From Zancudomyces culisetae HAW-14-8 (taxonomy: Eukaryota > Fungi > Kickxellomycota): a stretch of DNA of 64,000 nucleotides. The position numbers and the translations under genes were made by a program. Below the pieces are notes generated by a model. The model did not search any database. It saw only the letters and a list, made by a program, of their open reading frames with translations, and was not told the origin of the DNA. The stretch is from positions 620,001-684,000 of the forward strand of contig JBNJNM010000013.1 of assembly GCA_052426225.1 (NCBI GenBank), in the 5' to 3' direction. This document shows, piece by piece, positions 30,748-61,859 of the stretch. Positions within the stretch are counted from its first letter, which is position 1. Every line of letters begins with the position of its first letter.

Positions 30748-32802
30748 ATGGCAGGATTAAAGCGAGTGGCATTGTATTTTTTTCTGTTTTTGATAATAAC
30801 AGTGAATTCAGAATTTGCACCCCTATCGAGATCATCCAATAGGCATTCGAGATGTGCAGGATTATATAAGGGTCCAGCGAATAGCCCTTCGAAAGTTATG
30901 GGTAAGTACAGATGCAGAGCTTAATATTAATGCTCTTTGCTTTGTATTTATATTTATTGCAAATGGTTTGATTATCAAGCATGCTATGTTAAAATGACTA
31001 CAAACATTTTAGCTAACACTTAATATAAATATTAACACAATAGTAAATCTCAAGGGTATTACTTCAGCCGGAACAACACTAAGAATCATCAATTACAATG
31101 ATTACAAGAATTTTGGGATTTCAATAAAAAAGGTAATGTAAAAAACAGTGTTTATCAAAACGCAAGTACAATAGCCAACAAATAAATGTATCATAAATAG
31201 GATCAAGGTGAAACTGTAAAATCTATTTGTGACCAAGAGGCGATCACCTTGGGATTATGCACAGAAAGAAATTTGGGAAGATATCTAATAAAGGAAAAGG
31301 ATGGCAGTGGAAATCCAATCAAATTTGTTCAAAAAGCCTTTAACGATTATATTGAAAGAGAGGGCGATGATGGGAAAGGCTATACTGCACTTGAAAAGAT
31401 AGAATCTTACAGGGAAAATCCCGCATTAACAAACGAAGGCTTTGCCTCAGAGTTGGTGGTACCTAGAACAAAGATGGTATTATTTTCGGATTTACGCGAG
31501 AACTTGATCGATGGTATTGCAAATATAACATGGGTCGGTGCGCAAGAAGTTATCGTAACATACCAAGTTAATGCCACGGGATACTATTGTGTCGACACAT
31601 TGGGAAGCGGTGAATTTATTGGACGAGCGGACTGGATAAGTGGTTATGGAAGTCTACCGGCGTCGGAATATATAAAAATAGGTTTTTATCAAGCAATGGC
31701 TGTAATATACGCGGTGATCTTGATAGCGTGGATATGGATGTCAGTAAAAGTACGGAAGGACCTACTACCACTCCAAAGCTACATTGGATCGCTTATTGGG
31801 GTTATGCTGGTAAATATGTTACTCTCTGCATACTACTGGCGAGGGTACAACGCTTACGGATCTGCTAGCCAAGCATTAGCAATATTAATGGTTGTTTTCA
31901 GCGCAGCAAGAAACAGTTTGGCGTTTTTCCTACTCCTGGTGGTCTGTTTAGGATATGGAATCGTCAGGCCAACCTTGGGCTCAACGATGAACCAGTGCTT
32001 AATTTTGTTAGGACTCCATTTTATTGCAGGATGCGTATATGGTTTAGTCAACACAGACCGAGACGATAGTGAAATCGATGATGACTCGTTGTTTGTGGTG
32101 CTTCCAATCATGATCTTTACAATGATTTTTTATGTATGGAGTATGCATTCTGTTGTTGCAACGACCAGGATCTTGGAGACTCGCCGCCAATCCTACAAGC
32201 TTTCCATGTACAACAAGATGTGGAATCTGTTATTTTACTCCATTATTGCACTTTTTGCCTTTTTCGCAGTGAACATTGCCAATGTTGCTATGATGGGCGA
32301 CACAAACTGGACCGAAAAATCCTGGAGGTTCAGGTGGATGCTGTTTGACGGATGGCTAAACATTCACTTTTTGGTGGTCTTTTGCATCTTTTTGTGGATG
32401 TGGAGGCCAACAGAAAACAACCACAGATATGGTATCGAACAGCTTATGGGTGATGAAGGTGATGCTTGGGAGAGAGGTCCTAGTCATGATGGTCATGCCA
32501 TGATGCTTGCAGACGAGCGTGACTTCCAGTTGGCGTTGGAGGAGGCCGACAGGGTTGCCGATTCATTTGTTTTGCAAGAACAAAGCTCCAGACTCTCTTC
32601 ATCTTACCGAAATGTGAACCAACCCGATTCACAAGCTACTGCCAGATTTGTACTGGATGACGATGATAACCTTAGTGATGATGACCATGATCTGAATCTT
32701 GACAAAACTGGTGAGCCCAAAGATAGCTTAGATAGCAGTATTGATAACTTTGAGATTTCTCATAAGGAACCAGGCAATCTTGATGACGTGAAAAAATCCT
32801 GA
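30748..32802 (+). CDS. PTM1: PTM1/GPR107-like (lung seven-transmembrane receptor family) membrane protein; exons 30748-30901, 31044-31132, 31201-32802
   Basis: Signal peptide MAGLKRVALYFFLFLIITVNS, CAGLY motif, YQVNATGYYCV, YGSLPASEY, LLVVCLGYGIVRPTL, MWRPTENN and an acidic tail. Confidence 0.88.
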
Positions 32803-33634: not shown

Positions 33635-35995
33635 ATGGCAACAGAAATCAAATACAAGGCCGAGACCGAGTTTTTTGCCAATCGTGAGTATTTCTGACGT
33701 TAATTCTTGCAGTATTCATTTAGATTTTGAAAACTAGTGTTTAATAAATTTGGGGTACCACACTACTAACTTAGCTGAAGAAATCCAGGGACAAGCAGAA
33801 ATTAGTGCAAAGCAGGTACAGAAATACTCTGCTGATTGTACGAGTCAAGGAATAAAAACAAGCCTGTCTATCAGGGTAAGCCCCATAATAATAACCCGAT
33901 CCATGCTGTAGATGGATTGGTGTAAACGTTGGATACGTGTGAGGGAGGCGATGAGGTGGAGAGGTTGAGATACATACTAAAATCGGTATAATGAAAAAAA
34001 TAGGCTAAACTAGCAGAGCTTTTGCAGAAGAAAAAGCTCGAGGAGGCAAATAATGTTGAGGGAGAGTGCTGGGAGGATGGCGGGTATGTCCAACTTGACG
34101 AAAATACCAGCAGTATAGTTAAGGACCTGATTTCACAAAGGTAAGAATAGTATGAGACGCCGAATATTATGTATACTTGTTGCGTATTGGTTTTATAACT
34201 TGATGAAAAAAAAAACAAATAGCGAGTCTATTGAACGAGTACACAAAGAAAGGATATTTGAGGAGGAAATTACAGAAAGGGAAATGGACATCATCAACCA
34301 AAGAGTGGCACTCCAGCAAAAGCAGGCAAGTCATAGTTATTAAGAAACTACACCTGTAGAGAATTTCTTTTTTTAACGATATTTGCGAGAATATCACATA
34401 TGATAGAGTTAACTACAATTCATCAAAAAAAATAGTTTGCAGAGTTTGAGAGAAGAGAATTTCAGGTCAAGTCAAAAAAGATAAGAGGAATATTTGAAAA
34501 CCTAAACGACGAGGAGATTACGCTTTCACTAAAAAAGAGCAAAAACGATGAGGACGAAGCAATCATACAACTTTCGTCGCCAGGGTTTTTGATGGAGATC
34601 CGAAAAGAAATAGCGTATCAGTACACGCCAAAGGCAGAAGAAGTCACGATGACAGATATGCAAAGACATGAGTATGAAGTGCTTCTTAAGAAACGTACCA
34701 AGACAATCAAGAAGACGACAGCAGAAGCCGTTAAACGAAAGCAGCACACAGTTGGAAGACTACCATTGGATAAGGCATTGGAACAGCTCCGACAACACAC
34801 CAAGGAAGCAGGCGAAGGGGGAGGTAAGGACAAAGGAAGGCATCTGGAGGATGCAATGAAAGGATGGTCAGTGGCACGGATAAAGGCATATAAAGCCATT
34901 AAAACACGGCCAAACGCGTATTACTATCGGTTCAATGCACCAGGTGAAGTACAACGAGTGGGACAATGGACACAGGAGGAGCAGCGATTATTTCATTCTA
35001 GGTTGGCGGAAATAGGAGCAAACGGACAGTGGGGGATATTTAGCATGGTGATTCCAGGCAGAGTAGGATATCAATGTTCAAACTACTACAGATACTTGAT
35101 CGAAAGCAAGCAGCTGGTTGATCCAAACTATGTACTAGACAGCAAGGGAAAGGCACACTTTTTGTTTACAACAAAGCGCAAAAACGCGGATGGAACAGCG
35201 GTTAAAGAGTTTCGTGTTCACAACAGACAGAATAAAGCTGGTGCAAAGAGGGTAAAAGCATCTGGAAGAAGAAAGTACGACCTCAGCGACGATACCGAGG
35301 AAATGACGCCCGAATCAAGCAGTGACTCTTCATCGGCCTCAGTTGGGGCGAGCAGGTACAGAGGAGCGAGTAACAGAGGTTATAAGAGGCGCCGGATGTC
35401 CGATTCGGATGATGAAATCCGTGCGGACGACGTTTCGCTATCCTCTGACGATGACGGGCTGCAGCGAAACTCCAGCGATAGAGAGTATTACCAAGCGCCG
35501 CCTCGTGCAACAGGCACAACGGCACTGGGGCTGAGACGCAGCAACAGGGTCGGCAAATCGTCGAAATCCAAGCATGGTCACCAAAGTTATACAAACTCCG
35601 ACTCGGGCCGCAGCTCAACTGTTGAAGGATCCAACTATAATGGCGGCGCAAGCTCTGACGCCAACAATGCATCATCCACTTTTCTCGCGAACTCCAACAA
35701 CGATATTTACATCTCGGACTCTGAATACGAGTCTGAAGATACTAACTACAATCCGCTCAATCCTCTTCCAGATTTTACTGACCCAATTACCCTTGAAAAG
35801 GTCACAAAGCCTGCCATCTCGCCTTATGGCCATGTCATGGACTATGACAGCTGGATTAGATGCTTGATGTTTCCTCCAGACGGCTCGCAAAAAAACATAT
35901 GCCCTTTAACTAAAAAACCGCTAAACAAACGCGAGCTTGTGATTCTGACCCATGATAACATTGAGGAATACCGAGATAGAATCGTCAATAAATAA
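33635..35995 (+). CDS. Myb/SANT-domain protein with an N-terminal CUE/UBA-like segment and a C-terminal U-box; exons 33635-33683, 33775-33875, 34004-34140, 34223-34325, 34436-35995 (649 aa)
   Basis: Myb repeat GQWTQEEQRLF...WGIFSMVIPGRVGYQCSNYY. U-box DPITLEKVTKPAISPYGHVMDYDSW...CPLTKKPL. CUE-like KIRGIFENLNDEEITLSLKKSKNDEDEAIIQL. Intron 4 is GC-AG. Confidence 0.82.
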
Positions 35996-48302: not shown

Positions 48303-49535
48303 CTAAATAGCAATGGGTCTGGGGTTAGGATCCTTTAAATAATCGGGATTGTCTTTGGGTCGATGCCGTTTTTCAAACTTGGAAAGATGCGACAAAACAT
48401 ACTGTTTCGAAGTGGATGGATAGTTTCTCCAATTACGGAGACATTCGTAGTCGTGCAACGAGCCTTGCATATCACAAACGCAGTTGTTGTCCAAATTCTT
48501 GTTTGTAGGGCAAATGTGCAGCGTGTCGTGTCGATACCCAATGTCGTCGAACCAAAATAGTTTCTCCTTTGGTAGTAGCAGAGAGGCAGCTATGGAATGT
48601 ATTGGCGCATCACCCCATCGTTCGTAGAAGAAACCACCAGATAAATCCAAATAGTCTACATAAGAAGTGTACTCTTTACTTCGGTAAAAGTCCATGTCGA
48701 CAATCTCAAAATTCGACCAGTAGTGGCAGCCATTGTAGTCGCCATCACCACGCAAAATCCATTTAGCGTTATTTTCTTCGGGAAGCATATCCTTGTTTTT
48801 GAGGACCCAGTCAACGGTTGTGGTCCACAAAGTTTCTACTGTGTTTGCCAGCTCGTGTATAGCAATTGTGAACCCATACTTCAATCCGTTCTTTGCCATA
48901 AAATGGAATGGATCGTAGTTTATATCGCAGAAATATCCTACGTCTGGCTCGATTCGCCAATAATATTTATATGAAGCGAGTGCTGGGTGGTTGTAGAATC
49001 CCAGTGACTGGAATCTGCACATAAGCTGGTAGCTCAGCTTTCCTCCATATATGAACCTGCTTTTGTTTTTTTTGTGGGATCTAATGACTTTTGCCAGATC
49101 GACGTGAGCTGGAATAGACCAGTAGTCGGCCGACAAGTCCACATACGTTACATTGGCGTTTGTAACTGCTTGGATACCCTCTTTAAAGTCGTCTGAAAAG
49201 GGGATATCATTGAAAAATACATATGGGTAGTTGTATTTGCTATTCCACCTTTCCTCAAACTGTCTAATCGTGTATTTCAGTTTTTCTAATTCGGTATTCA
49301 TAACCAGGGCTACAATTGCTGCCTTTTCTCTTATAGTTGATTTACTGGTGTCACCAGTTCTCAGTTCTAGCACGTGATCCTTGTCTTTTCCATAGATTGT
49401 ATTAGACAATCTGCTCTCTGCATTGTACGATAAGGTATTTCCAGCTATTGTCCTTATTAACAGCATGGCTGTCACTGCTACTCCTACGACAAACATCAGC
49501 CTTACAACTAGTAGGCCCAAATTTAGTCCGTTCAT
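48303..49535 (-). CDS. Alpha-1,2-mannosyltransferase, GT15 (KRE2/KTR family)
   Basis: N-terminal TM anchor, YNYPYVFFND, SYQLMCRFQS, YYWRIEPD, YNGCHYWSNFEI and GGFFYERWGDAPIHS. Confidence 0.93.
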   Translation of the reverse strand: MNGLNLGLLVVRLMFVVGVAVTAMLLIRTIAGNTLSYNAESRLSNTIYGKDKDHVLELRTGDTSKSTIREKAAIVALVMNTELEKLKYTIRQFEERWNSKYNYPYVFFNDIPFSDDFKEGIQAVTNANVTYVDLSADYWSIPAHVDLAKVIRSHKKNKSRFIYGGKLSYQLMCRFQSLGFYNHPALASYKYYWRIEPDVGYFCDINYDPFHFMAKNGLKYGFTIAIHELANTVETLWTTTVDWVLKNKDMLPEENNAKWILRGDGDYNGCHYWSNFEIVDMDFYRSKEYTSYVDYLDLSGGFFYERWGDAPIHSIAASLLLPKEKLFWFDDIGYRHDTLHICPTNKNLDNNCVCDMQGSLHDYECLRNWRNYPSTSKQYVLSHLSKFEKRHRPKDNPDYLKDPNPRPIAI

Positions 49536-52171
49536 ATTTCTGTTGCGTTTTAAATCTATATTTTTGCTTTATTTTAAATTCTTTTTTCTTTTCGTTATAT
49601 GTTATCGATTAAATAAGTGTCGGTACCGTACATGAGCTTTTTAGATGTAGAGGAAAACAAAACGCTAACAAGGTAGATATACGGGGGGGGAAAGGAAGTA
49701 TATAAACCAAGAGCTAATAGAAATAAACCACAGAAACCGGAAAAAAATAGCGTAACTGGGAGATACAAGAGAAAGATGTTATAATGGTACCTTTTGAGCA
49801 AAAAAATAATTATAGGAATGAATGAATGAATGAGTGAATGGACGAGTGACCCACTTTTTAGATTCACTTTGGAGTGTAAAAAAAAACAGAAAGCAAACAA
49901 CAATAACAAGGTTTTGTGAACAGGAATTGGGTAATTCTTTTTTTTTCCACTTTTTTTTCTCGTAATAATTAGTTCTTGATTGTAAAATAGATATAATACG
50001 TAAATAGATAATTAGAGATAATTGAAAATAGCAAATCCTCATAAACTACTAAATCCATGGAAATAGAAAAAAAATTTTTTTTTTAAATTCCAAAGAAAGT
50101 ACGGCAATTATTGGATAAAGGATAAAGAAAAAAAATGAAACTGGGAGGCAAACTTTTTGTAATATTTGAAATTATCTCATAATCGGGATTAGTAATTCTA
50201 CACCGCTATTTGCCCAGAAATCCCAAGAGGTAGAATGTAAAGATTTACCAGGTTTTGGTGGAGAATAGGAAATGAGGTTTCAGTGTCCACGTAAAAATGA
50301 AGCGCAAAATATAAAAACCGAGTGGAATTGAAAATATTAACGAAAATAGGATATAGGAAATAGGAAAAAGTGGCAGCCTAAACACTAAACCAATGGGCCA
50401 AATCTGCAGAAATATAGAGGGCAAGGTGTAATTGTTATGCTGCAAAGAAAAGGTTGACAATTAATGATATACAAAAAATGAAATACCAGCTCTTCAAAGA
50501 GGATTCCCAAGAAAGTAAGGGAAAAATAGTGACCGCATATTTCTGTTTGCTTGGCTGATATACACATCCAAAGATGCCAAAGACAAGACAGAATAGGCGC
50601 AATAGTATGTATAGAGCATTAATGTAGACAAGTAGAGTTGTTCACATAAAAATGAGGCAAGTAAAGGAAAAAAAAGGGGGAAAAGTAGAGGACAACTGCT
50701 TTTTTCACATGATTTTATGTCTTGGTTAAACTGTCCCTGCTATACCTACCTACCTACCACAGTTTAAATATCTTTTCATACCCGGTATTTATGTATAAGA
50801 GAAATGTAATATATCGGTACCTTTTTCTTCTAGATAGAGAAAGGAGGGCCAAACATAAAAAGTAGGAGATTTCTTTTTTTTAGTTTTATAAAGCTTATGA
50901 AAAGGATAAGATATAGGTTGGTAAAGATGATAAAGGAAACCGTAAAAATACAAGAATACAAAAAAAGAGAAAATGAGATGAGATGAGAAAATGGCGATAG
51001 ACCTAGTTTTTTTTTACAATACACAAAGTCCAGTCGTATTGTCGCTTGACAAGAATGCGTTTGTCGGCAGATTCAATAATGATGCATGGATTTTGGTTCT
51101 GAATCAAGTCCTCTGGATATACATATTCGGCTCTCCGAGAGATGGAAAAAACCAAACCTGCAGCACCTTGGTTCACATTTCCCCACTCTAAATATAAAGA
51201 TTGTTGTTTATATTGTAAACTTGTTTTTTAAATTTATGCACTTAGTGGTAAAAGAATGTACAAACTAAAAAAAAAGGGAGAGAAGACACCTACTTGAAAC
51301 GCACAGACCAGTGTCATCAATAACTAGTACGCCCACGACGTCCTTGTCCTGAATTCTATAGTTGCAAAAGGATTCGAGTTAAAAATGAAATTGTTGTTGT
51401 TGATAGCACTTGTGAACCTGTAAGAGTTGTTAATAACAGAGAAATTTAATTTAGAAAAATGGAATTGTAAAGTCAAAAAAGTACATTTTTTCTATACAGT
51501 GTTCTACTTGAGTTTCCATTTGGCGGTGGTGTATGAATTGAGGGGGGGTTGAGGAGATATATTTGTATAGTATTTGTATAATGTTTGTATAATATTTGTT
51601 ATTAGCAATTGTAATCATAAAGCCAAAAAGAAAAAATAAGAGCAGGAGTGTGATAGGGAAAAAAAGAAAAAGAAAAAAAATGCCCAATTTCTACTGGGAA
51701 TGCAGCAATTTACTTTTCTCTCTTTCAACTAACATGAAACTCTTGCCCAATTGCAGCAATTTGTCTTTTCAAGTTCAATATTATTTGGTGTGATAATATC
51801 CCGTTGGCTGTCTTTAATTTTTTTTTTTAAACTTGACACTTTAAATTATAGTACGAAAAAAAAAAAATTTAAAAAATTAAAAGCTTGAAGTGTTTGTGTT
51901 CTGGATATTGATAGTTTCATTCGAGATCAAACATTACTAGAAAGAAAAAAACAGTAAGTATAGGAAAGAAAAAAATTTTGCAATGAAAAAAAAATTTTTT
52001 TTTTCTTTAAAGGAAAAAAGTATAAGGATATATTATATCTCTAGTCAGAAATAGAAAAAGTATTAGGGGAGAGAAAGAAGGAATTTGTAAATTTGTGAAA
52101 TGTATAGAGAATAAAATAATAATAATAATAATAACAACAAAAAAAAGGAAAACGGAGTACATAATAGAAAA

Positions 52172-55100
52172 ATGGAGGTAATAAAAAACCAACCAAAACC
52201 AACAACCACCACAACCAAATTTGACACACTAAAAAGGCAAAAACGGGCCATCAAGCCCGGCAGAGAGTTTGAGTATCCGGCACTACAAAAGCTTTCGGAG
52301 CCACATATAGAATCGTTCAACCGGATATTTGAAGCGAGTGGGAAAAACCAAGAGTCATTGGTGGAAATTGCACTTGGTGAACTTGGAAAGAGAGTTATCC
52401 ATGATATGAAGGTTGATGAAGGTGTAGGGAAATATGGAAATAAGCTGACATACTGGATCGAGGATGTTCAATTGATGAGACCAAGCGTGCAGTCCAGAGG
52501 AGGACAGTTTGATGGGAGATTGGAGTACCCAGCAGAGTGCCGTGAAAGAAATGGCACATATAGAGGTCGGATGACAGCCAAGGTGTGTTGGCAGGTGAAT
52601 GACAGTGAGGAAGTGCATTCAGAGATCAAGTCGCTGGGGCAAGCACCAATTATGGTGAAGTCCAACCGGTGTAATCTGAATGGAATGGGACCAAGCGAAC
52701 ACATCAAGCACCATGAAGAAGCAGAAGAGTTTGGTGGATATTTTGTGGTGAATGGAGGAGAAAGAATCATTCGATTGTTGATAGCACCACGACGAAACCA
52801 CGTGCTGGCAGTGAACCGACCATCGTATGAGAACAGAGGGCCAAGTTTTACGGGGTATGCCACGATGGTGCGTAGTGTGAGAAAAGATCAAACAAGTTGC
52901 ACAACAACGCTGCACTATTTGAAGGATGGAAATTTGCAATACCGGTTTGCAATGTACAAGCAGGAATATCTGATCCCAGTGATATTGATAATCAAGGCTT
53001 TGGCAGAGGTGAGTGATTTGGAGATATTTGAAGGGCTGATGCAGGGAAGAAATGAAGATACAGTGCTGCGGGGTCAGGTAGAGCAGCTAATCCGCGGATT
53101 GAGAGCGTATAAGGTATACAACCAGAAGCAAAGTTTGAAGTACTTGGGTAGCAAGTTCCGCGTGGTGATGGGAATGGCAGAAGACGCAAGTGACGAAGAG
53201 ATAGGACGGGCGCTGATTAGGAGAGTGGTGATGGTTCATTTGGATAATTGGCGGGACAAGTTGCAAATGGTGCTGTTCATGGTTCGCAAACTATATGGGG
53301 TCGTTGCAGGTGAGTGGCAGACAGACAACTTGGATGCACTTCAAAACCAAGAGTTGTACATGCCAGGGTTTTTGTATTTAGGAATTATCAAGGAGAAGCT
53401 GGAGGATATTTTGAACAATGTACGAGCAGCTATTCGACAGGACTTGATGCGAAATGCAGGGATGGTACGATTGGGAGATAAAGGGTATATCTCGCGGGTG
53501 TTGAAAAAGGTACAGATGGACGTTGGAGCGAAACTGCAATATTTTTTGGCGACAGGCAACCTTATCAGTCGATCAGGAATGGATATGCAACAGACATCAG
53601 GGTTTACAGTGATTGCTGAAAAGCTAAACTTTTTGCGGTATCTGTCACATTTCCAGTGTGTGCATAGAGGATCGTTCTTTGCCGAACTCAAAACCACGAC
53701 AGTACGTAAGTTGTTGCCAGAGTCCTGGGGATTTTTATGTCCAGTACATACACCTGACGGTTCGCCATGTGGGCTGTTGAATCATTTGGCACACAAATGT
53801 GAGCCAACGACACGAATTGAGGGCACAAGGGATGTTGAACGAGTGATATACGATAGTGGAATGTCGGTTGGACAGAGTATTTACAGCAGAAGTAATAGTG
53901 GCGCGACGGCCGAAGAAATAGTAGTGGTACAAGTGGACGGTAAAGTTTTGGGATATTGTACACAAAGTATGGCGGAAACTATAGCTAAACGACTTCGTCA
54001 ATTAAAGAACAAACAAAACAATAGCAACAACAAGCTGGAATATAGACTACCAAAGACACTTGAGATTGGATATGTACCAGTCAGTCACGGTGGGCAATAT
54101 CCTGGGTTGTACATCTTTTCGACACCAGCAAGATTTATGCGGCCAGTAAAACACCTCCAGACAAACAGTATTGAGCTGGTTGGGTCGTTTGAACAGGTAT
54201 ATATGGACATTGCCATCCTCAACCAAGACATTATTGAAGGTGTTAGTGAGTATATCGAAATCTTGCCTACACATATCCTGTCCTCAGTTGCCAATTTGAC
54301 TCCATTTTGTGACTTTAACCAATCACCCAGAAACATGTACCAATGCCAGATGGGTAAACAGTCGATGGGAACACCTGCCCAATCCGTCCGACACAGAGCA
54401 GACAACAAGCTGTACTGGCTGCAGAATACTCAGACACCTATTGTACGACCCTCGCTACACGACAAGTTTGGAGTAGATGGATATCCCAATGGTATGAATG
54501 CAGTGGTTGCAGTATTGGCGTACACAGGTTACGATATGGAAGACGCCATGATTCTTAACAAATCCTCGTTTGAACGTGGCTTTGGGTATGGGTTTATCTA
54601 CAAGTCACAAATCTTTGACTTGGCCGAACTCCGTAGAAGAGGCGATCCAATTACAAACCACTTTGGACTGGGCTCCGATGTCATTGCCAACAATCACATC
54701 CGCTCGTTTATTGATCTTGACGGATTGCCCCACATTGGTGTTTCACTCTCTGATGGCGATCCTGTAGTTGCTGTATTTGATGATGTACGCAACAAGACCT
54801 TTGTACGCAAATACAAGGGCGAACCGTGCTATGTCGATACGGTGCGGCTGGCATGTTCATCCGACCCCGAACTACAACATGTAGTTGTGACGTACCGTAT
54901 TCCTCGTTCTCCTATCATTGGTGACAAGTTCAGTTCACGTCACGGTCAGAAGGGTGTCAATTCTATCAAGTACAGCGCTGTCGATTTACCCTTCACCGAG
55001 TCTGGACTTCAACCCGATGTTATTATCAACCCTCACGCTTTCCCCTCCCGTATGACTATTGGTATGTTTGTCGAATCCCTAGCTGGTAAATCTGGTGCCC

Positions 55101-55780
55101 TCCACGGCATTCCCCAGGACGCTACTCCCTTCCAATTCGACGAAAATAACTCGGCTGCCGACTACTTTGGCTCTCAACTTCTTCGTGCTGGCTACAACTA
55201 TCACGGCAACGAGCCTATGTACTCGGGTATTTCTGGAAACGAACTGGCTGCCGATATTTACATTGGCGTTGTCTACTACCAGCGTCTTCGTCACATGGTT
55301 AGCGATAAGTACCAGGTCCGTACCACTGGTCCTGTCGATCCTCTCACCATGCAACCTGTCAAGGGTCGTAAGAAGGGTGGTGGTATCCGTCTTGGTGAGA
55401 TGGAACGTGATTCTCTCCTTGCTCACGGCTCCTCCTTTATCCTACAAGACCGTTTACTCAACTGTTCCGATTATTCCAAACTCTATGTTTGCAAGTCTTG
55501 TGGTTCTCTCTTGGCCCCTATTCTCTTACCTTCCTCCTCCTCTTCCTCTACTTCCTTTAATGATTCTATGGATCCCGATCTGTTTTCTACTCTCCAATCT
55601 GCTGCCGCCTCTCAATCTACCTCTTCTGCCAACCTTTCTTATAACAACAACACCTTTGACGTCTTTTGTAAATCTTGTACTTCTTCCAACATTGGCCTTG
55701 TTGCTGTTCCTTTCGTCCTCAAGTTTTTGGCTACTGAACTAGCCTCCATGAACATTAAACTGGTCCTATCCGTTTCTTAA
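52172..55780 (+). CDS. RPA135: RNA polymerase I second-largest subunit
   Basis: 1202 aa, intronless. HIESFN, YPAECRER, VRKLLPESWGFLCPVHTPDGSPCGLLNHL, DFNQSPRNMYQCQMGKQ, GDKFSSRHGQKG and GGIRLGEMERD. Confidence 0.97.
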   Translation: MEVIKNQPKPTTTTTKFDTLKRQKRAIKPGREFEYPALQKLSEPHIESFNRIFEASGKNQESLVEIALGELGKRVIHDMKVDEGVGKYGNKLTYWIEDVQLMRPSVQSRGGQFDGRLEYPAECRERNGTYRGRMTAKVCWQVNDSEEVHSEIKSLGQAPIMVKSNRCNLNGMGPSEHIKHHEEAEEFGGYFVVNGGERIIRLLIAPRRNHVLAVNRPSYENRGPSFTGYATMVRSVRKDQTSCTTTLHYLKDGNLQYRFAMYKQEYLIPVILIIKALAEVSDLEIFEGLMQGRNEDTVLRGQVEQLIRGLRAYKVYNQKQSLKYLGSKFRVVMGMAEDASDEEIGRALIRRVVMVHLDNWRDKLQMVLFMVRKLYGVVAGEWQTDNLDALQNQELYMPGFLYLGIIKEKLEDILNNVRAAIRQDLMRNAGMVRLGDKGYISRVLKKVQMDVGAKLQYFLATGNLISRSGMDMQQTSGFTVIAEKLNFLRYLSHFQCVHRGSFFAELKTTTVRKLLPESWGFLCPVHTPDGSPCGLLNHLAHKCEPTTRIEGTRDVERVIYDSGMSVGQSIYSRSNSGATAEEIVVVQVDGKVLGYCTQSMAETIAKRLRQLKNKQNNSNNKLEYRLPKTLEIGYVPVSHGGQYPGLYIFSTPARFMRPVKHLQTNSIELVGSFEQVYMDIAILNQDIIEGVSEYIEILPTHILSSVANLTPFCDFNQSPRNMYQCQMGKQSMGTPAQSVRHRADNKLYWLQNTQTPIVRPSLHDKFGVDGYPNGMNAVVAVLAYTGYDMEDAMILNKSSFERGFGYGFIYKSQIFDLAELRRRGDPITNHFGLGSDVIANNHIRSFIDLDGLPHIGVSLSDGDPVVAVFDDVRNKTFVRKYKGEPCYVDTVRLACSSDPELQHVVVTYRIPRSPIIGDKFSSRHGQKGVNSIKYSAVDLPFTESGLQPDVIINPHAFPSRMTIGMFVESLAGKSGALHGIPQDATPFQFDENNSAADYFGSQLLRAGYNYHGNEPMYSGISGNELAADIYIGVVYYQRLRHMVSDKYQVRTTGPVDPLTMQPVKGRKKGGGIRLGEMERDSLLAHGSSFILQDRLLNCSDYSKLYVCKSCGSLLAPILLPSSSSSSTSFNDSMDPDLFSTLQSAAASQSTSSANLSYNNNTFDVFCKSCTSSNIGLVAVPFVLKFLATELASMNIKLVLSVS

Positions 55781-55789
55781 TCATCTTCT

Positions 55790-56197
55790 CCCCCCCCCCC
55801 CCCCTTCCCCCCTTTTCTCCCTACTTGCAAGCATCTTTATTCTTTCTTTTTTTTACTTTACATTATTCTAATCTTTCTCCGTTAATATTTTCCTTTAATT
55901 TTTTATTCTGTCAAATCTGAAACATGATCGTTTTTCTGTTTTTCCAATTTTATCTATCCACTAATTTTGTTATCCATCACCCACCCCACCCCACCCCACC
56001 CCCGATATCCCCTTTCTCCTCCCCTCCAAATTCTTGGTTATTTTTTCCGCTAATTTCCTCTAACTCTTGCATTATTTCCATTCAAGCAAACACAACTCTG
56101 TCAATATAAAATGATTACATTCCTTTTTTAGTCATATGAGCACGGACTATTTCGTTTCATCTAATGATCTTCCTCCTCCTCCTCCTCCTCCTCCTCC
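55790..56197 (+). repeat. Cluster of C-rich simple repeats: poly-C (55790-55804), (CCCCA)n (about 55980-56003), (CCT)n (56171-56197)
   Basis: Direct reading. Confidence 0.85.
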
Positions 56198-56467
56198 TTT
56201 CTTTTTTTATTTATTTTATATATTGCCAATGCTTGTTATAAATCATGTCTATTGTTGTTTCATATATAAAACCATTTTATCTCTTTCTCCTTGTATTTTT
56301 GTTCATATCAGGTCGTTATTTATATTTTATTACACATTTCCATTTTCTTGAATATTCATTTTATTAAATACTATATTCTTGTAGCATTACAATAGTAACT
56401 AGCTAAAAATATAAAAAGATATAATAATACCAATCTACTTGGTCTAATACACAAATAAGTAATAATC

Positions 56468-58690
56468 ATGCAAAACAAAAGACAAAGGCCCAACAAGTAT
56501 ACTCAGCAAAAGATAACAAACTATTCACTTGACCACCCCGAACAGTTTTGGCTCGATCAAGCACATAAGCTGATCGACTGGCATCAACCACCCACAACTG
56601 CGCTCTCATACCGGGAAGGTCCTACCAAAAAACACCTTGTCGACTGGTTTCCCGATGGTAAACTCAATCTATGCTACAACGCATTGGACCGCCACGTACG
56701 CGATGGCTACGGAGAACAAACCGCCGTTATTTATGATTCACCAGTAACACAGACCAAACGTCGGATATCATATGCACAATTGCTCGATCAAGTCGTTGAT
56801 TTTTCCAAGGTCCTCGTGTACCACTACCATGTCAAACAAGGTGATACCGTGGTTATTTATATGCCCATGATCCCTCATACAATGGTTGCCATGTTGGCAT
56901 GTGCACGTATCGGTGCTATCCACTCTGTCGTCTTTGGTGGGTTTGCTCCAATCGAACTCGCAAAACGAATCGATGATTGTAGGGCTAATCTCGTCATCTC
57001 TGCATCATGCGGTATCGAACGACCCGACAAATTTATCGAGTACATCCCACTACTTCACACCGCCATCACCCGCCACTGTCAATATAAACCTGCCCATAAA
57101 CTCGTCTACATCCGCGAAGCTCTGCCCGTAGATCTACCAAAATATAACTCTGAAAGTAATGGATATTCTTGCTGGTCAAAACTCGTTGCTACTTATAAGA
57201 ACAGCCCACCCGTCCCCATTGCAATCGTTGACACAGCGCATCCATTGTACATGCTGTATACCAGTGGTACTACAGGTGCGCCCAAGGGTGTCGTACGTCC
57301 GTCCGGTTCACACGCAGTTGCACTTGTATACGCCATGCGCCACGTATACGGGTCAAACCCCGGCGAAGCCTTCTTTGCAAGTAGCGACTTTGGTTGGGCA
57401 GTGGGCCACTCACTCACATGCTATGGTGCATTGATGAACCGTAACGAGACCGTTGTGTATGAAGGTAAACCTGTAGGCACACCTGACCCTGGAGCATTCT
57501 TCCGTGTTTTGTCCGAATACAACGTCACGGTCTTTTTCACATCACCAACCGCACTCATGATCTTGCGAAAAGAAGATAATGATGCCAAGTACCGCCGCAA
57601 ATACGATTTGTCCCATGTACGTGGACTCTTCCTTGCTGGTGAACGTTGTGTTCCCGAAATTCATCGGTGGTGGATCAACTACATTACCAATAACAACCCG
57701 ACAGCAACATCTGCAGCTTGCAGCAATTCACATGATATTGCTCGCGCTCCCGAATTTTCGTTTGCGTATATGGATGGGTCGCCCACAAACCCCGTCGTCA
57801 ATGTCTCGACTGACCACTGGTGGCAAACCGAATCTGGCTCTCCTCTTACAGCAATCTGTCTTGGTGATATCACTGCTGGCGCGGATATCCCACCCATTCG
57901 CTTTGGCAGTGCTGGTATGGCGTTGCCTGGTGTTGACTTACGCATCTTACGTACACACAGCGATGATGGCGACGAAGATGATACTAGCCCCAAATCAACC
58001 GACCGTGCACTTGAAGAAGCTGCACCTGGAGAGATTGGTAGTGTTGTCATCAAACTCCCGCTCCCACCTGGATGTTTCTCAGGTTTGTGGAAGAACGACA
58101 AAAAATTCTTTACCGAATATTTTGAGCGTTTCCCTGGATACTATGCTACTGGCGACGCAGGCTTTGTAGATGCGGATGGGTACGTCTTCATTTTATCACG
58201 CGACGACGATGTTATCAACGTTGCTGCCCACCGTTTGTCTACATCGACTGTAGAAGAAACTGCTACCAGACACCCTACCGTCGCAGAATGCTGTGTCGTT
58301 CCCCGCCCCCATAATATCAAGGGTCAAGTCCCCGTTGTCTTTGCCGTCCTCAAATCCGGGTCTTATACACCCAGTCAACTCGCTGATGCCAAATCTCAAA
58401 TTGCTGCTGCTGTCCGCTCAAACATTGGCGCAATTGTGTCGCTCCTGCCCGAAAATATCTTTTTCGTCGAAAAGTTGCCAAAGACCCGCAGTGGCAAGAT
58501 TCTTCGCAAATTGTTGCGTAATATGTTTACGGCTATCGCTGATCATACCGCAGATACAAACCGTGGTTCGAGTAGACTAAGTACTACCGTTATTCCCTTG
58601 GATTTGCCTGCTACCATGGAAGATTTCGCTGTTGCGTATGATATTTGGAAACAGCTCCTAGATACCCCTCATGTCTACAGCAAGCTTTGA
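56468..58690 (+). CDS. Short-chain acyl-CoA synthetase, ACSS3/PrpE (propionate-CoA ligase)-like, with C-terminal SKL
   Basis: WFPDGKLNLCYNALDRH, MLACARIGAIHSVVFGGFA, YTSGTTGAPKG, YEGKPVGTPDPGAFFR, DHWWQTESG, INVAAHRLST and LPKTRSGKILR. Confidence 0.9.
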   Translation: MQNKRQRPNKYTQQKITNYSLDHPEQFWLDQAHKLIDWHQPPTTALSYREGPTKKHLVDWFPDGKLNLCYNALDRHVRDGYGEQTAVIYDSPVTQTKRRISYAQLLDQVVDFSKVLVYHYHVKQGDTVVIYMPMIPHTMVAMLACARIGAIHSVVFGGFAPIELAKRIDDCRANLVISASCGIERPDKFIEYIPLLHTAITRHCQYKPAHKLVYIREALPVDLPKYNSESNGYSCWSKLVATYKNSPPVPIAIVDTAHPLYMLYTSGTTGAPKGVVRPSGSHAVALVYAMRHVYGSNPGEAFFASSDFGWAVGHSLTCYGALMNRNETVVYEGKPVGTPDPGAFFRVLSEYNVTVFFTSPTALMILRKEDNDAKYRRKYDLSHVRGLFLAGERCVPEIHRWWINYITNNNPTATSAACSNSHDIARAPEFSFAYMDGSPTNPVVNVSTDHWWQTESGSPLTAICLGDITAGADIPPIRFGSAGMALPGVDLRILRTHSDDGDEDDTSPKSTDRALEEAAPGEIGSVVIKLPLPPGCFSGLWKNDKKFFTEYFERFPGYYATGDAGFVDADGYVFILSRDDDVINVAAHRLSTSTVEETATRHPTVAECCVVPRPHNIKGQVPVVFAVLKSGSYTPSQLADAKSQIAAAVRSNIGAIVSLLPENIFFVEKLPKTRSGKILRKLLRNMFTAIADHTADTNRGSSRLSTTVIPLDLPATMEDFAVAYDIWKQLLDTPHVYSKL

Positions 58691-58919: not shown

Positions 58920-61859
58920 CTAATCTGATTCAATATCCGAGTCGTTTCCTCCTGTAGTACTCAACACACGATCATACTCCATTGAGTGCCCACCTTTACG
59001 CTTACCAATACCTTTACCACCACCCAATGGAAACTTATCATTACCTTTTGCCTTCAAAAACTCAAAGTCATAATCCAAAGCATCCTTTGTATCAGTTTGT
59101 ATCCTACTAGCCACATAATTATCATCCTCGCTATCACCGTTTTTTGTAGAGTGGCTGTGGTATGTCTTGCTCTTGCCACCCAAACCCAGCTTCTTCAGTC
59201 CAATCATTTCGGCTTCACCAAATCCACCAGCTTCTGGACTACTACTACGGTCTGAACCAACCGTTGTCCTGCTGCGACCATCAAATCCACCTCCATGAGT
59301 CTGGTTATCCCTGAAATGACGCGGTGAGGAAGACGCATTTAACGTTTTATTATCCAAGGAATCTGGATTGGTGGCATTCGCGGCTTCTACAGCTATATTA
59401 TGAACCATCTTGGAAACACTAGCAGTCGCATTCTGTGCAACCATTTTGGCTGGTCCCCACAAATTCAGATTGTGAATAACAAACACGGTTGCTCCTAACA
59501 ATGCAAGTACAACTAGATACAGTGGATTGAACAAAACCACCATTGCCTCATTCCAGCCCAACAGAATCATCATAATCACTGCCCAGTAAGGAACTTGCGT
59601 CTTTGTCATTACCACCGCGCGTTTTGCTTCCAAGAACATTGTGTCTGCATCACGGCTAAACTTCTTTGAGACTCCGCGCTGCTGGATACTGTTCAGTAGC
59701 ACCAAACTCGACTCCAAATTAAATCGCCTAAGTTGGAATACTGGAAGACGCTCTTCGTACAACGCTTCATCAACACCCGTTGCTGTCTCCTCAGCTACAT
59801 AAAAATAGTCTTGCTTTCCAAGAGTGTTTTTCAGTGCAAAGTTAGTCGAAAGACATCCGATATCAATCGATGAATACAAAGGAAGCAGTGATAAAGCCTC
59901 TGCCTTGGCAGTGGCAAAGCAGCCATCAATATCGTCTCTAGCACTCCATACTTTAGGAATGCCCTTAGCATCATACTTAAACTTGTCTTCAAATCTGTTT
60001 CGAAGCTTCATATGCAACATCTGCTCTCCAAGTTCTTCATTTAAATGCTTAACCAATCCTTCCCAGCACAACTGCCTTAATCTTCTTTTGAGTTTTTGCA
60101 ACTCCACTGCCGCCGCATCTGTATTAGCTGATGCTGCATCTCCATCTACTTTCGTCGAATATTCAAGTCCGAGCTTATCCATTCCAGATACATCAATCTC
60201 CAAATCCAATTCGCCATTTCTTGTAGAATCGACTAGACCCATCAATATTTGTTCCCACATATCTGCACGAGCATCCGCAAGAATCTCTGAAACTTGAGGT
60301 CCGTAGTTGACCATTGCGTTTTTCTGTGCCCTATTCACAATCCTCTCCATTTCAATCATTCTGAGTCTCGCCGTTGCAAAGTCCAATTTCTTGTTCAAGA
60401 GCTCAATGTCATTAGAGTATGTCCACTCAGCATCTTTCAGCATCATTGCTTCTACAACAGACTTGACGTACTCTACAGCCTTTGTCTTTTCTCCCTTGAT
60501 TACCGAACAAAATTCACCACCATATCCTTTTCCTCCCGCTGCTCCTCCTTCATTCATTTCGAGTCGTTTTGCGCTGGTTTCCTCAAAACTGGTTACAGCT
60601 CTAGATATCGCATTTTTAGTTTGCCCGACAAAGACTGTCTGCAACTCGCCGTGAACCGTCGCCAACAACTGTTGTCTCTTTTTTTCGTAAACCGTTTTAT
60701 TATACCTACTTGCCTGTTCATCAAATCGTGACACCGTTTGTGTACGTATTTCTTCAAATTTTTTGCCCATATCCCTAACCACATTTCCCCCTCCTATACT
60801 TATACTCAGCCCCTGTACATTTTCACGGAACGGAATCAGTGCTGCTGCCGATATTTCATCACATCTATATTGTGCCAACAACTCTTGCTGAGTAGGCAAA
60901 TCTAAATCCTTGTTTGAAACCACCTTTTCCCATACTCCTTCTGCATAATGTTGGAATCCATCCGCGGGGACTTGTCTCGAATATTTATCTTTAAAGACAT
61001 AGGTATCATGGCTGGGATCACTGAAATCTAATCTCAGTCTGCGTACTTCGGTGTCGAATCGCTCTGGTTGAAGCAACAGATGTGGCAGCGACGTAAATTG
61101 GATATCAAAATAGTCATCCAATTGCTCATCTTTGAGCTCATCGGGTTTGTTCAACTCGCTCCATATCTTGTGTAAATCCTTAGTAACTGTCTGTCCCAAC
61201 ACTTCGAGCGGTGTTCTACTCACATGATCTCTAATCACGAAATACAACAATGTCTTTGCACCCCTGTTTCTGCCAAACAACATCAAATTAACTTCAAATA
61301 CGGTCTTCAGCAACCCCATGTTGGCACCATTATATAAACCAACCATGTTTTCCCACATGTTTACTATCACCACTTCCGCAATTGCAAGTGAAAACAGCGC
61401 ACTTTTTCTCTCGAAATCTTGATCCTCCCCTCTTTCGCGACCATCTGTACCCTCCACATCAAACACCAACACAGGCATATCACCTCCCCTGTCGCACCAT
61501 ATTCCCTTGGTCGTCTGTTGCCGTTTGCTTTCGTTCATCTCTTTGAAACTTGTCTGGAACAGCCTATTTAGCAATGTACTTTTTCCTGTACTTTGCGACC
61601 CAAACACTGCAACCAAGTTGTAATCAAAACCTGCATCAAAAAGATGCCATTGCTCTTTCATATACTTGGAAACGTCCTTTGAAAAACATTGTTCCTCATC
61701 AATAAGTTGAAGCATCCCTCTTTTTGCTGCTATCTTTGCTGGTTTTGAATTTCCCTTTTCGTAGCTGTACGAATCAAGGTCGTGTTCCTCTGTCACAGGT
61801 GGTCTTTTCTCGGTCCATGAATCCGGAACAACTGCACTATCATCATTTCCGTCTATCAT
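58920..61859 (-). CDS. SEY1: Dynamin-like ER fusion GTPase SEY1/RHD3
   Basis: VFGSQSTGKSTLLN, QTTKGIW, DVEGTDGRERGEDQDFERKSALF, NKDLDLPTQQELLAQYRCDEI and the TM hairpin ILLGWNEAMVVLFNPLY. Confidence 0.96.
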   Translation of the reverse strand: MIDGNDDSAVVPDSWTEKRPPVTEEHDLDSYSYEKGNSKPAKIAAKRGMLQLIDEEQCFSKDVSKYMKEQWHLFDAGFDYNLVAVFGSQSTGKSTLLNRLFQTSFKEMNESKRQQTTKGIWCDRGGDMPVLVFDVEGTDGRERGEDQDFERKSALFSLAIAEVVIVNMWENMVGLYNGANMGLLKTVFEVNLMLFGRNRGAKTLLYFVIRDHVSRTPLEVLGQTVTKDLHKIWSELNKPDELKDEQLDDYFDIQFTSLPHLLLQPERFDTEVRRLRLDFSDPSHDTYVFKDKYSRQVPADGFQHYAEGVWEKVVSNKDLDLPTQQELLAQYRCDEISAAALIPFRENVQGLSISIGGGNVVRDMGKKFEEIRTQTVSRFDEQASRYNKTVYEKKRQQLLATVHGELQTVFVGQTKNAISRAVTSFEETSAKRLEMNEGGAAGGKGYGGEFCSVIKGEKTKAVEYVKSVVEAMMLKDAEWTYSNDIELLNKKLDFATARLRMIEMERIVNRAQKNAMVNYGPQVSEILADARADMWEQILMGLVDSTRNGELDLEIDVSGMDKLGLEYSTKVDGDAASANTDAAAVELQKLKRRLRQLCWEGLVKHLNEELGEQMLHMKLRNRFEDKFKYDAKGIPKVWSARDDIDGCFATAKAEALSLLPLYSSIDIGCLSTNFALKNTLGKQDYFYVAEETATGVDEALYEERLPVFQLRRFNLESSLVLLNSIQQRGVSKKFSRDADTMFLEAKRAVVMTKTQVPYWAVIMMILLGWNEAMVVLFNPLYLVVLALLGATVFVIHNLNLWGPAKMVAQNATASVSKMVHNIAVEAANATNPDSLDNKTLNASSSPRHFRDNQTHGGGFDGRSRTTVGSDRSSSPEAGGFGEAEMIGLKKLGLGGKSKTYHSHSTKNGDSEDDNYVASRIQTDTKDALDYDFEFLKAKGNDKFPLGGGKGIGKRKGGHSMEYDRVLSTTGGNDSDIESD

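What the first reader, a model, noticed from the sequence alone, without database searches (positions are those of the whole stretch)
52172..55780. Synonymous codon usage reverses halfway through RPA135: a G-to-C strand-skew flip inside one ORF
Seen: the 5' half uses purine-ending codons (GTG GTG AAT GGA GGA GAA AGA; 53161-53220 has 25 G and 8 C). The 3' half uses pyrimidine-ending codons (GGT CGT AAG AAG GGT GGT GGT ATC CGT CTT; 55021-55080 has 8 G and 19 C; 55501-55560 has 4 G and 24 C). The change falls around 54.0-54.9 kb and the flanking non-coding DNA follows it: A/G-rich upstream, C/T-rich downstream. Plus-strand +1-frame shadow ORFs (54570, 55095) occur only in the 3' half, as expected when NTA/NTG codons become rare. 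Inference: translational selection or transcription-coupled bias should not reverse within one mRNA, so this points to a position-fixed, strand-asymmetric mutational process such as a replication origin or termination zone. It looks much stronger than the weak origin skews known in yeasts.
Basis: partly seen in the sequence, partly recalled or inferred. Interest (0 to 1): 0.8.

Follow-up and report, generated by a model that had tools for sequence, protein, structure and literature searches.

The report
Giant strand-skew switches inside fungal genes
In the insect-gut fungus Zancudomyces culisetae, the neutral letters of long housekeeping genes switch abruptly from purine-rich to pyrimidine-rich partway along the gene, about 17 times more strongly than at baker's-yeast replication origins, which probably marks fixed points inside genes where DNA replication changes direction.

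Summary
Confirmed and general. The window is Zancudomyces culisetae (Harpellales). In RPA135 the purine share of four-fold sites falls from 0.84 to 0.07 (GC skew +0.72 to -0.84, AT skew +0.63 to -0.86), as a step centred near 54.7 kb. It is a purine/pyrimidine switch, not only G-to-C. It is not a chimera: a second assembly carries it and both halves group with Harpellales. RPB2, RPC2 and eIF4G show the same step at 60-69% of their length. Over 264 kb, 14 of 15 in-gene changepoints are falls and rises sit at gene edges. The skew spills into neighbouring genes and spacers (decay 3-5 kb, p=0.003). Orthologues in Smittium, Furculomyces and Coemansia lack it. A replication-strand mutational imprint is the likeliest cause (about 0.64), but polarity is unresolved. 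I favour origins inside GC-richer gene bodies with Pol epsilon-type pyrimidine mispairs (0.36) over in-gene termination (0.28); break repair or transcription remain possible. No replication or RNA data were available. Earlier readers in this scan noted the same flips elsewhere in this genome; I found no paper describing it.

The parts
52172..55780 (+). RPA135/RPA2, RNA polymerase I second subunit, single intact intronless ORF of 1202 aa; host of the skew step
52472..53671 (+). Purine plateau: four-fold sites A70 G62 C10 T16 (R 0.84, GC skew +0.72, AT skew +0.63)
54080..55230 (.). Transition zone (10-90% of sigmoid; centre about 54,660; single-changepoint estimate 54,896); candidate point where fork direction switches
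54897..55780 (+). Pyrimidine plateau: four-fold sites T91 C59 A7 G5 (R 0.07, GC skew -0.84, AT skew -0.86)
49536..52171 (.). Upstream flank (mostly non-coding, holds a small minus-strand LAMTOR5 gene in the old annotation), purine-rich on the plus strand, RY +0.16, GC skew +0.20
55781..56467 (.). RPA135-ACS spacer, strongly C/T-rich (RY -0.42, GC skew -0.61 away from gene ends) with poly-C and CCT runs; partial upward step in skew
56468..58690 (+). Acyl-CoA synthetase gene: sense strand pyrimidine-rich from its 5' end (R4 0.36 to 0.26), so the pyrimidine domain continues through a promoter
58920..61859 (-). SEY1/RHD3 gene; plus strand stays mildly pyrimidine-rich; tail of the domain fades by about 63-65 kb
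55095..55742 (+). +1-frame shadow ORF, a by-product of stop-codon loss in the pyrimidine plateau; not treated as a gene
30748..32802 (+). GOST-domain gene with a weaker step of the same sign at about 32,150 (0.66 to 0.32)
33635..35995 (+). Gene with a weaker step of the same sign at about 35,200-35,540 (0.68 to 0.35)
48303..49535 (-). Minus-strand glycosyltransferase (family 15) gene with a plus-strand fall at about 48,840 (0.63 to 0.31)

Best explanation
The step is the footprint of a long-lived, efficient replication origin lying inside the gene body. Shown: a strand-asymmetric, mainly transversion-based composition bias that switches sign sharply inside long genes and decays over several kb. 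Inferred: forks diverge from the step; the leading-strand polymerase (Pol epsilon) leaves more uncorrected pyrimidine-pyrimidine mispairs (dT opposite T or C) than the lagging-strand polymerases, so the nascent leading strand drifts to pyrimidines. That makes the plus strand C/T-rich right of the origin and A/G-rich left of it. Origins would be licensed in the GC-richer coding DNA of an AT-rich genome, and forks would meet near gene edges and spacers.
For: Step shape: sigmoid beats a linear-logit gradient by 18-35 log units in RPA135, RPC2, RPB2 and eIF4G, widths 0-1.2 kb. The two largest falls (-1.05, -0.93 over 1.4 kb) exceed the largest rises (+0.75 or less). Spill-over into non-host genes: dLL 75, null 95% 10, p=0.003, decay 3-5 kb, dLL 10 left without the two strongest centres. 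No mirror-image pyrimidine zone left of the RPA135 or eIF4G promoters. On the purine-rich strand C is most depleted between pyrimidines (x0.22 against x0.63 between purines) and before T (x0.12), the context reported for C-dT replication mispairs (PMC4216917). T is depleted x0.32; T-dT mispairs are typical of Pol epsilon and rare for Pol delta/alpha/zeta (PMC3061053). Two-fold sites on the purine-rich strand lean to G and T, like the yeast lagging strand, and the GC-skew direction matches yeast origins (PMC3459929). Centres are GC-richer than the rest of their genes (+2.8 points, P=0.007). Origins in bodies of strongly transcribed genes are reported in AT-rich Plasmodium (PMC10810204).
Against: No replication data. 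Simulations with initiation in AT-rich/intergenic DNA (r=+0.13 to +0.14) fit as well as those with initiation in GC-rich/exonic DNA (r=-0.13 to -0.14). Mapped yeast origins are almost all intergenic (PMC3459929). With steps at 60-69% of gene length, most of each gene would be replicated head-on to transcription. The AT-skew direction is opposite to yeast origins. The amplitude is about 17 times the yeast value, and a large jump that decays within a few kb was argued not to be replicative at C. albicans centromeres. MMR and glycosylase genes are present, so no repair loss explains the strength; Pol epsilon exonuclease residues could not be read. The context test is post hoc and rests on small counts. 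No shared motif at the centres.
Confidence: 0.36

Rival explanations
1. Same replication imprint, opposite polarity: origins lie in AT-rich spacers and promoters, the leading strand is purine-rich, and forks meet inside long genes, held in the 3' part by head-on transcription.
For: Rises of +0.6 to +0.75 sit at gene edges, often at the 5' end of the strong genes (52,425; 183,536; 81,515); every junction class shows a mean rise (+0.12 to +0.20). 12 of 14 falls lie in the 3' half of the gene, giving mostly co-directional replication. Intergenic-origin simulation fits as well. Human forks start at transcription starts and end at gene 3' ends (bioRxiv 10.1101/324079). The G/T lean of the purine-rich strand also fits deamination of a lagging-strand template (established for bacteria; from memory).
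Against: A step about 1 kb wide or less with plateaus near saturation needs near-synchronous flanking origins or a barrier (inference). Efficient flanking origins should leave mirror-image skew beyond them, which is not seen: DNA upstream of RPA135, eIF4G and RPB2 is still purine-rich and ACS is still pyrimidine-rich.
Confidence: 0.28
2. Break repair: double-strand breaks recur inside long conserved exons; resection exposes the top strand on the left and the bottom strand on the right, and pyrimidine damage, translesion synthesis or biased heteroduplex repair makes the exposed strand purine-rich.
For: Predicts an antisymmetric signal strongest near the centre with a reach of a few kb, a GC rise at centres and a G/T lean on the exposed strand. 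SPO11 is present.
Against: To drive four-fold sites to 93% pyrimidine the process must outweigh all other transversions at the site (inference). Polymorphism between the two assemblies is not raised at the step (3-5 SNPs/kb in RPA135 against 5-14 in flanks). The known intein (homing) sites do not match the steps: RPC2 site at aa 560 against a step at aa 745; RPA2 site aa 725 against aa 828.
Confidence: 0.13
3. Transcription-coupled mutation with two opposed sources: sense transcription loads purines on the coding strand in the 5' part, and antisense or read-through transcription from the 3' side reverses it.
For: Sense strands carry a purine baseline (about 0.53) and a gene-anchored fall remains after fitting centres (coefficient 0.4); 51 of 65 genes fall 5' to 3' (P=2e-5) and introns follow (0.50, 0.47, 0.44). 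The strongest cases are housekeeping genes, and amplitude drops at gene edges.
Against: Skew of the same sign extends upstream of promoters and through ACS; the DPP4-like gene convergent with eIF4G stays purine-rich to its 3' end (0.89) while the switch lies 1.9 kb inside eIF4G. Antisense would have to replace, not dilute, the sense effect. No RNA run was listed.
Confidence: 0.13
4. Translational selection, or selection on mRNA structure, differing along the message.
For: The pattern is oriented by gene direction in most genes.
Against: All codon families swap between A/G and C/T endings, six-fold amino acids swap boxes, and non-coding DNA and neighbouring genes follow; orthologues lack it.
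Confidence: 0.03
5. Assembly chimera or recombinant of two homologues.
For: The step is sharp.
Against: An independent short-read assembly is colinear over window 42.9-57.3 kb with 14 substitutions in the gene and the same profile; both protein halves group with Harpellales at 100% support; the same step occurs in many genes.
Confidence: 0.01

Closest known systems
Replication-associated GC/TA skews at S. cerevisiae, K. lactis and C. albicans origins (PMC3459929)
   Same: Sign switch at a fixed point read at third codon positions and in spacers; G-rich left, C-rich right as at yeast origins.
   Different: About 156 against 9 points of GC skew; purine/pyrimidine axis instead of G+T against A+C; decay over 3-5 kb instead of 20 kb; switch inside coding exons instead of between genes.
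Skew jumps at Candida albicans centromeres (74 points, back to baseline in about 3 kb; PMC3459929)
   Same: Very large, short-range, antisymmetric jump whose cause is disputed.
   Different: Here about twice as large, inside essential genes, and repeated every 5-30 kb rather than once per chromosome.
Plasmodium falciparum origins in bodies of strongly transcribed, GC-richer genes (PMC10810204)
   Same: AT-rich eukaryote; candidate sites in GC-richer bodies of housekeeping genes; no sequence motif.
   Different: Those were mapped experimentally; the 'skew' search of that paper showed no such strand imprint. Here only composition is known.
Pol epsilon error signature in yeast mutators and POLE-mutant tumours (PMC4216917, PMC3061053)
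   Same: C-dT and T-dT mispairs that add pyrimidines to the nascent leading strand; C lost most between pyrimidines.
   Different: Seen there as fresh mutations in defective strains; here it would be a fixed genome-wide equilibrium in a wild fungus, with no polymerase defect shown.
Human CpG-island bidirectional asymmetries and transcription-coupled termination (PMC2817419; bioRxiv 10.1101/324079)
   Same: Bidirectional strand asymmetry around GC-rich points; replication switch points tied to transcription units.
   Different: Those are centred on promoters or gene ends and run over tens of kb to Mb; here switches are mid-exon and kb-scale.

Membership tests
Replication-associated compositional skew | Sign switch at neutral sites (four-fold positions and non-coding DNA) | tested here: met
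Replication-associated compositional skew | Follows chromosome position across gene ends, in genes of either strand | tested here: met
   (p=0.003, decay 3-5 kb); a gene-anchored component also remains
Replication-associated compositional skew | Switch coincides with a measured change in fork direction | not testable with these tools
   no OK-seq, Pu-seq or timing data; no paper found
Yeast-type replication origin | Intergenic location | tested here: not met
   all 23 falls beyond 0.38 lie inside genes, 250 bp or more from an edge
Yeast-type replication origin | Leading strand enriched in C and A | tested here: not met
   the C-rich side is T-rich at four-fold sites; C direction matches, A does not
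Yeast-type replication origin | Shared origin motif | tested here: not met
   no 7- or 8-mer significant after multiple testing in 11 centres
Yeast-type replication origin | ORC machinery present | tested here: met
   ORC2 found; other subunits not searched
Replication origin versus terminus | Polarity (which strand is leading) | tested here: inconclusive
   simulations tie; spectrum leans to origin; telomere-proximal DNA could not be fetched
Pol epsilon-type error signature | C lost most in pyrimidine-flanked context; T lost on the same strand | tested here: met
   YCY x0.22, RCR x0.63; T x0.32; post hoc, small counts
Pol epsilon-type error signature | Altered exonuclease or fidelity residues in Pol2 | not tested
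Repair-loss mutator genome | Loss of mismatch or base-excision repair genes | tested here: not met
   six MutS-family loci, MLH1, a MutL_C gene, one UDG and three HhH-GPD matches present
Transcription-coupled asymmetry | Constant sign along the sense strand, confined to the transcription unit | tested here: not met
Transcription-coupled asymmetry | Antisense RNA over the reversed part | not testable with these tools
   no RNA run was listed
Intein homing-site break | Step at the intein insertion site | tested here: not met
Chimeric or recombinant gene | Halves with different ancestry, or assembly-specific junction | tested here: not met

The most novel reading that the evidence does not exclude
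Z. culisetae starts replication at efficient, long-fixed sites in the middle of its long housekeeping genes (the reverse of the yeast arrangement), and has a lineage-specific leading-strand transversion bias strong enough to set synonymous codon usage, so the origin map of the whole genome can be read from sequence at kb resolution.
Probability: 0.33. Interest if true: 0.88.

Novelty: new variant of a known kind. Interest (0 to 1): 0.7.

Why it matters
Whatever the cause, a nuclear genome in which four-fold sites go from 84% to 7% purine within one essential gene is far outside the published yeast origin skews, and it confounds codon-usage, selection and phylogenetic analyses of markers such as RPB2. 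If it is replication, it gives a sequence-readable fork-direction map for an early-diverging fungus (my paper search found no origin study for these fungi), and a natural test of whether Pol epsilon's error signature can shape a genome. Close relatives lack the pattern, so the responsible change can be sought by comparison.

Tried and rejected
Assembly chimera or recombinant gene: rejected. Translational selection: rejected. Purely gene-anchored gradient: insufficient, since centres predict neighbours and some genes stay purine-rich or pyrimidine-rich throughout. Promoter-centred symmetric source: no mirror skew beyond the RPA135 or eIF4G promoters. Intein homing breaks: sites do not match. 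Loss of MMR, UDG, HhH-GPD glycosylases, ORC2 or SPO11: all present. Shared motif, CpG/ApT anomaly, repeat or hairpin at the step: none. Amino-acid replacements following the skew: +0.19 in the 5' part and -0.13 in the 3' part (P=0.005) but Furculomyces gives +0.13/-0.12, so inconclusive. Replication simulations: could not settle polarity. Self-training of my gene finder diverged; the first-pass models were used and a few are fused. More of the own genome could not be fetched after 200 kb; I did not seek those letters by another tool, and later own-genome searches were run without loci. No RNA run was listed. Paper searches found no description of this pattern.
Full report
Identity. The ORF at 52172-55780 is RPA135/RPA2 (1202 aa). 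Its best database match is the Zancudomyces culisetae protein, followed by Smittium and Furculomyces at 62-66%. The host assembly has 27.1 Mb in 25 contigs, in line with the published PacBio HiFi assembly of this insect-gut fungus (PMC12611240). That paper does not mention skew.

The three quoted 60-mers have exactly the stated G and C counts. At four-fold degenerate sites the purine fraction is 0.84 at 52472-53671 and 0.07 at 54897-55777. GC skew goes from +0.72 to -0.84 and AT skew from +0.63 to -0.86, so this is a purine/pyrimidine switch and nearly a mirror image. The best changepoint (54,896) gains 98 log units against a permutation maximum of 7.5. A sigmoid places the centre near 54,660 with a width of about 1.15 kb. 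All eight four-fold families switch, and Arg and Ile codon choice follows. The shadow ORFs follow from the loss of +1-frame stops (47 before 54,300, 10 after).

Not an artefact. The older short-read assembly is colinear across 42.9-57.3 kb, differs at 14 bases (4 conservative residues) in the gene and has the same profile. Trees of the two protein halves both place Z. culisetae with Harpellales at 100% support.

It is genome-wide. I analysed the window plus the next 200 kb with home-made first-pass gene models (approximate, a few fused). In 51 of 65 genes the sense purine fraction falls from 5' to 3' (P=2e-5). Of 15 significant in-gene changepoints, 14 are falls on the plus strand, in genes of both orientations, and 12 of the 14 lie in the 3' half. 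RPC2 and RPB2, fetched as paralogues and not chosen for skew, show steps as strong (0.86 to 0.24; 0.86 to 0.13), as does eIF4G (0.75 to 0.15); all four steps lie at 60-69% of gene length and fit a sigmoid better than a gradient. All 23 large falls are inside genes, and most large rises are at gene edges. Earlier readers of this scan noted the same in RPB1, YCF1, INCENP and DMA1; I did not check those.

It follows position, not only genes. Intergenic DNA more than 200 bp from any gene end is purine-rich upstream of RPA135 (+0.16) and eIF4G (+0.14) and pyrimidine-rich downstream of RPA135 (-0.42). RPB2 flanks behave alike for at least 1 kb. The tandem ACS gene is pyrimidine-rich from its start, and the gene convergent with eIF4G stays purine-rich on its sense strand to its end. 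Centres defined from host genes alone predict four-fold sites of other genes (dLL 75, shifted-centre null 95% = 10, p=0.003), with decay length 3-5 kb; a smaller gene-anchored gradient and a sense purine baseline remain.

It is lineage-specific. RPA135 of four Smittium species, Furculomyces, Coemansia and Ramicandelaber shows no fall; four of five Harpellales show a weak rise (for example 0.29 to 0.46, P=7e-5). RPC2 orthologues are flat or weakly rising (the S. mucronatum gene was only partly recovered).

Spectrum. The main effect is on transversions. Transitions lean weakly: on the purine-rich strand two-fold sites have more G (0.59 against 0.39) and less C (0.28 against 0.45). On that strand C falls to x0.44 and T to x0.32 of the unskewed level; C is lost most between pyrimidines (x0.22 against x0.63 between purines). 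Lujan et al. report C-dT mispairs with pyrimidine-flanked template C as common replication errors (PMC4216917), and T-dT mispairs are characteristic of Pol epsilon (PMC3061053). If the purine-rich strand is the leading-strand template, these errors give the observed pattern and the falls are origins. This link is inference, and the context test is post hoc. Centres are 2.8 points GC-richer than the rest of their genes (P=0.007) and share no motif. MutS and MutL homologues, UDG, HhH-GPD glycosylases, ORC2, SPO11 and three nuclear PolB exonuclease domains are present, so no gene loss explains the strength.

Polarity is open. Monte Carlo fork-direction models with initiation in AT-rich or intergenic DNA (r up to +0.14) and in GC-rich or exonic DNA (r down to -0.14) fit equally. 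For origins at the steps: sharper and larger falls than rises, no mirror skew beyond the promoters, the spectrum, the GC-skew direction of yeast origins and the Plasmodium precedent of origins in transcribed gene bodies (PMC10810204). For termination at the steps: yeast origins are intergenic, rises sit at gene edges, the 3' offset gives mostly co-directional replication, and human forks end at gene 3' ends. Against replication altogether: the jump is about 156 points against 9 at S. cerevisiae origins, and a large short-range jump at C. albicans centromeres was argued not to be replicative (PMC3459929). Break repair and opposed transcription therefore stay in play at about 0.13 each.

Verdict. 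A real, strong, genome-wide and lineage-specific strand asymmetry, best read as a replication imprint of unusual size, axis and location. It works like an origin or terminus skew but fails the tested features of yeast-type origins (intergenic site, C+A leading strand, motif), so I file it as a new variant of a known kind. Limits: 264 kb plus two loci of a 27-Mb genome, approximate gene models, no RNA or replication data, Pol epsilon sequence not read.

Noticed in passing
L029, L030, L034, L035 (RPA135 orthologues): Smittium and Furculomyces RPA135 genes show a weak gradient of the opposite sign (purine fraction rising 5' to 3', P down to 6e-5); possibly the same positional process with reversed spectrum.
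   Followed up: partly
P0013, P0014, P0027 (RPA2) and P0193, P0216, P0227 (RPC2): Several Coemansia RPA2 proteins carry a roughly 400-aa insertion at the site matching window aa 725 (about 54,344), and RPC2 proteins carry one with an intein Pfam hit at aa 560; Z. culisetae has neither.
   Followed up: partly
G000:C24 (L005-L008): Contig C24 holds repeated copies (26-kb spacing, two orientations) of a 1095-aa RNA polymerase-like frame and a 701-aa PolB frame, suggesting a linear-plasmid- or virus-like element assembled as a concatemer. Observed only.
   Followed up: no
window 42.9-64 kb against L032: The two assemblies differ at about 146 substitutions in 21 kb (mostly transitions), so they are different haplotypes or strains; four conservative amino-acid differences in RPA135.
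   Followed up: partly
window 52172-55780: Z. culisetae RPA135, RPC2 and RPB2 are each one long open frame, while Smittium and Furculomyces RPA135 and RPC2 genes are longer than their coding length (introns); intron-rich regions of the 264 kb looked less skewed, but the correlation with intron density was not significant.
   Followed up: partly
window 55500-55650 and 52178-52220: Low-complexity protein insertions in RPA135 follow local composition (Ser/Leu/Phe-rich near the C terminus, Lys/Asn/Thr-rich at the N terminus).
   Followed up: no
G000:C13:613.4k and 540k; C11:1813k: SPO11 lies 7 kb before the window; PolB exonuclease domains at C13:540k and in a 2370-aa frame on C11 (probable Pol epsilon).
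   Followed up: no
window 64063-70677 equivalents (L009): Two inverted CRAL-TRIO-like paralogues just beyond the window end share N-terminal sequence.
   Followed up: no
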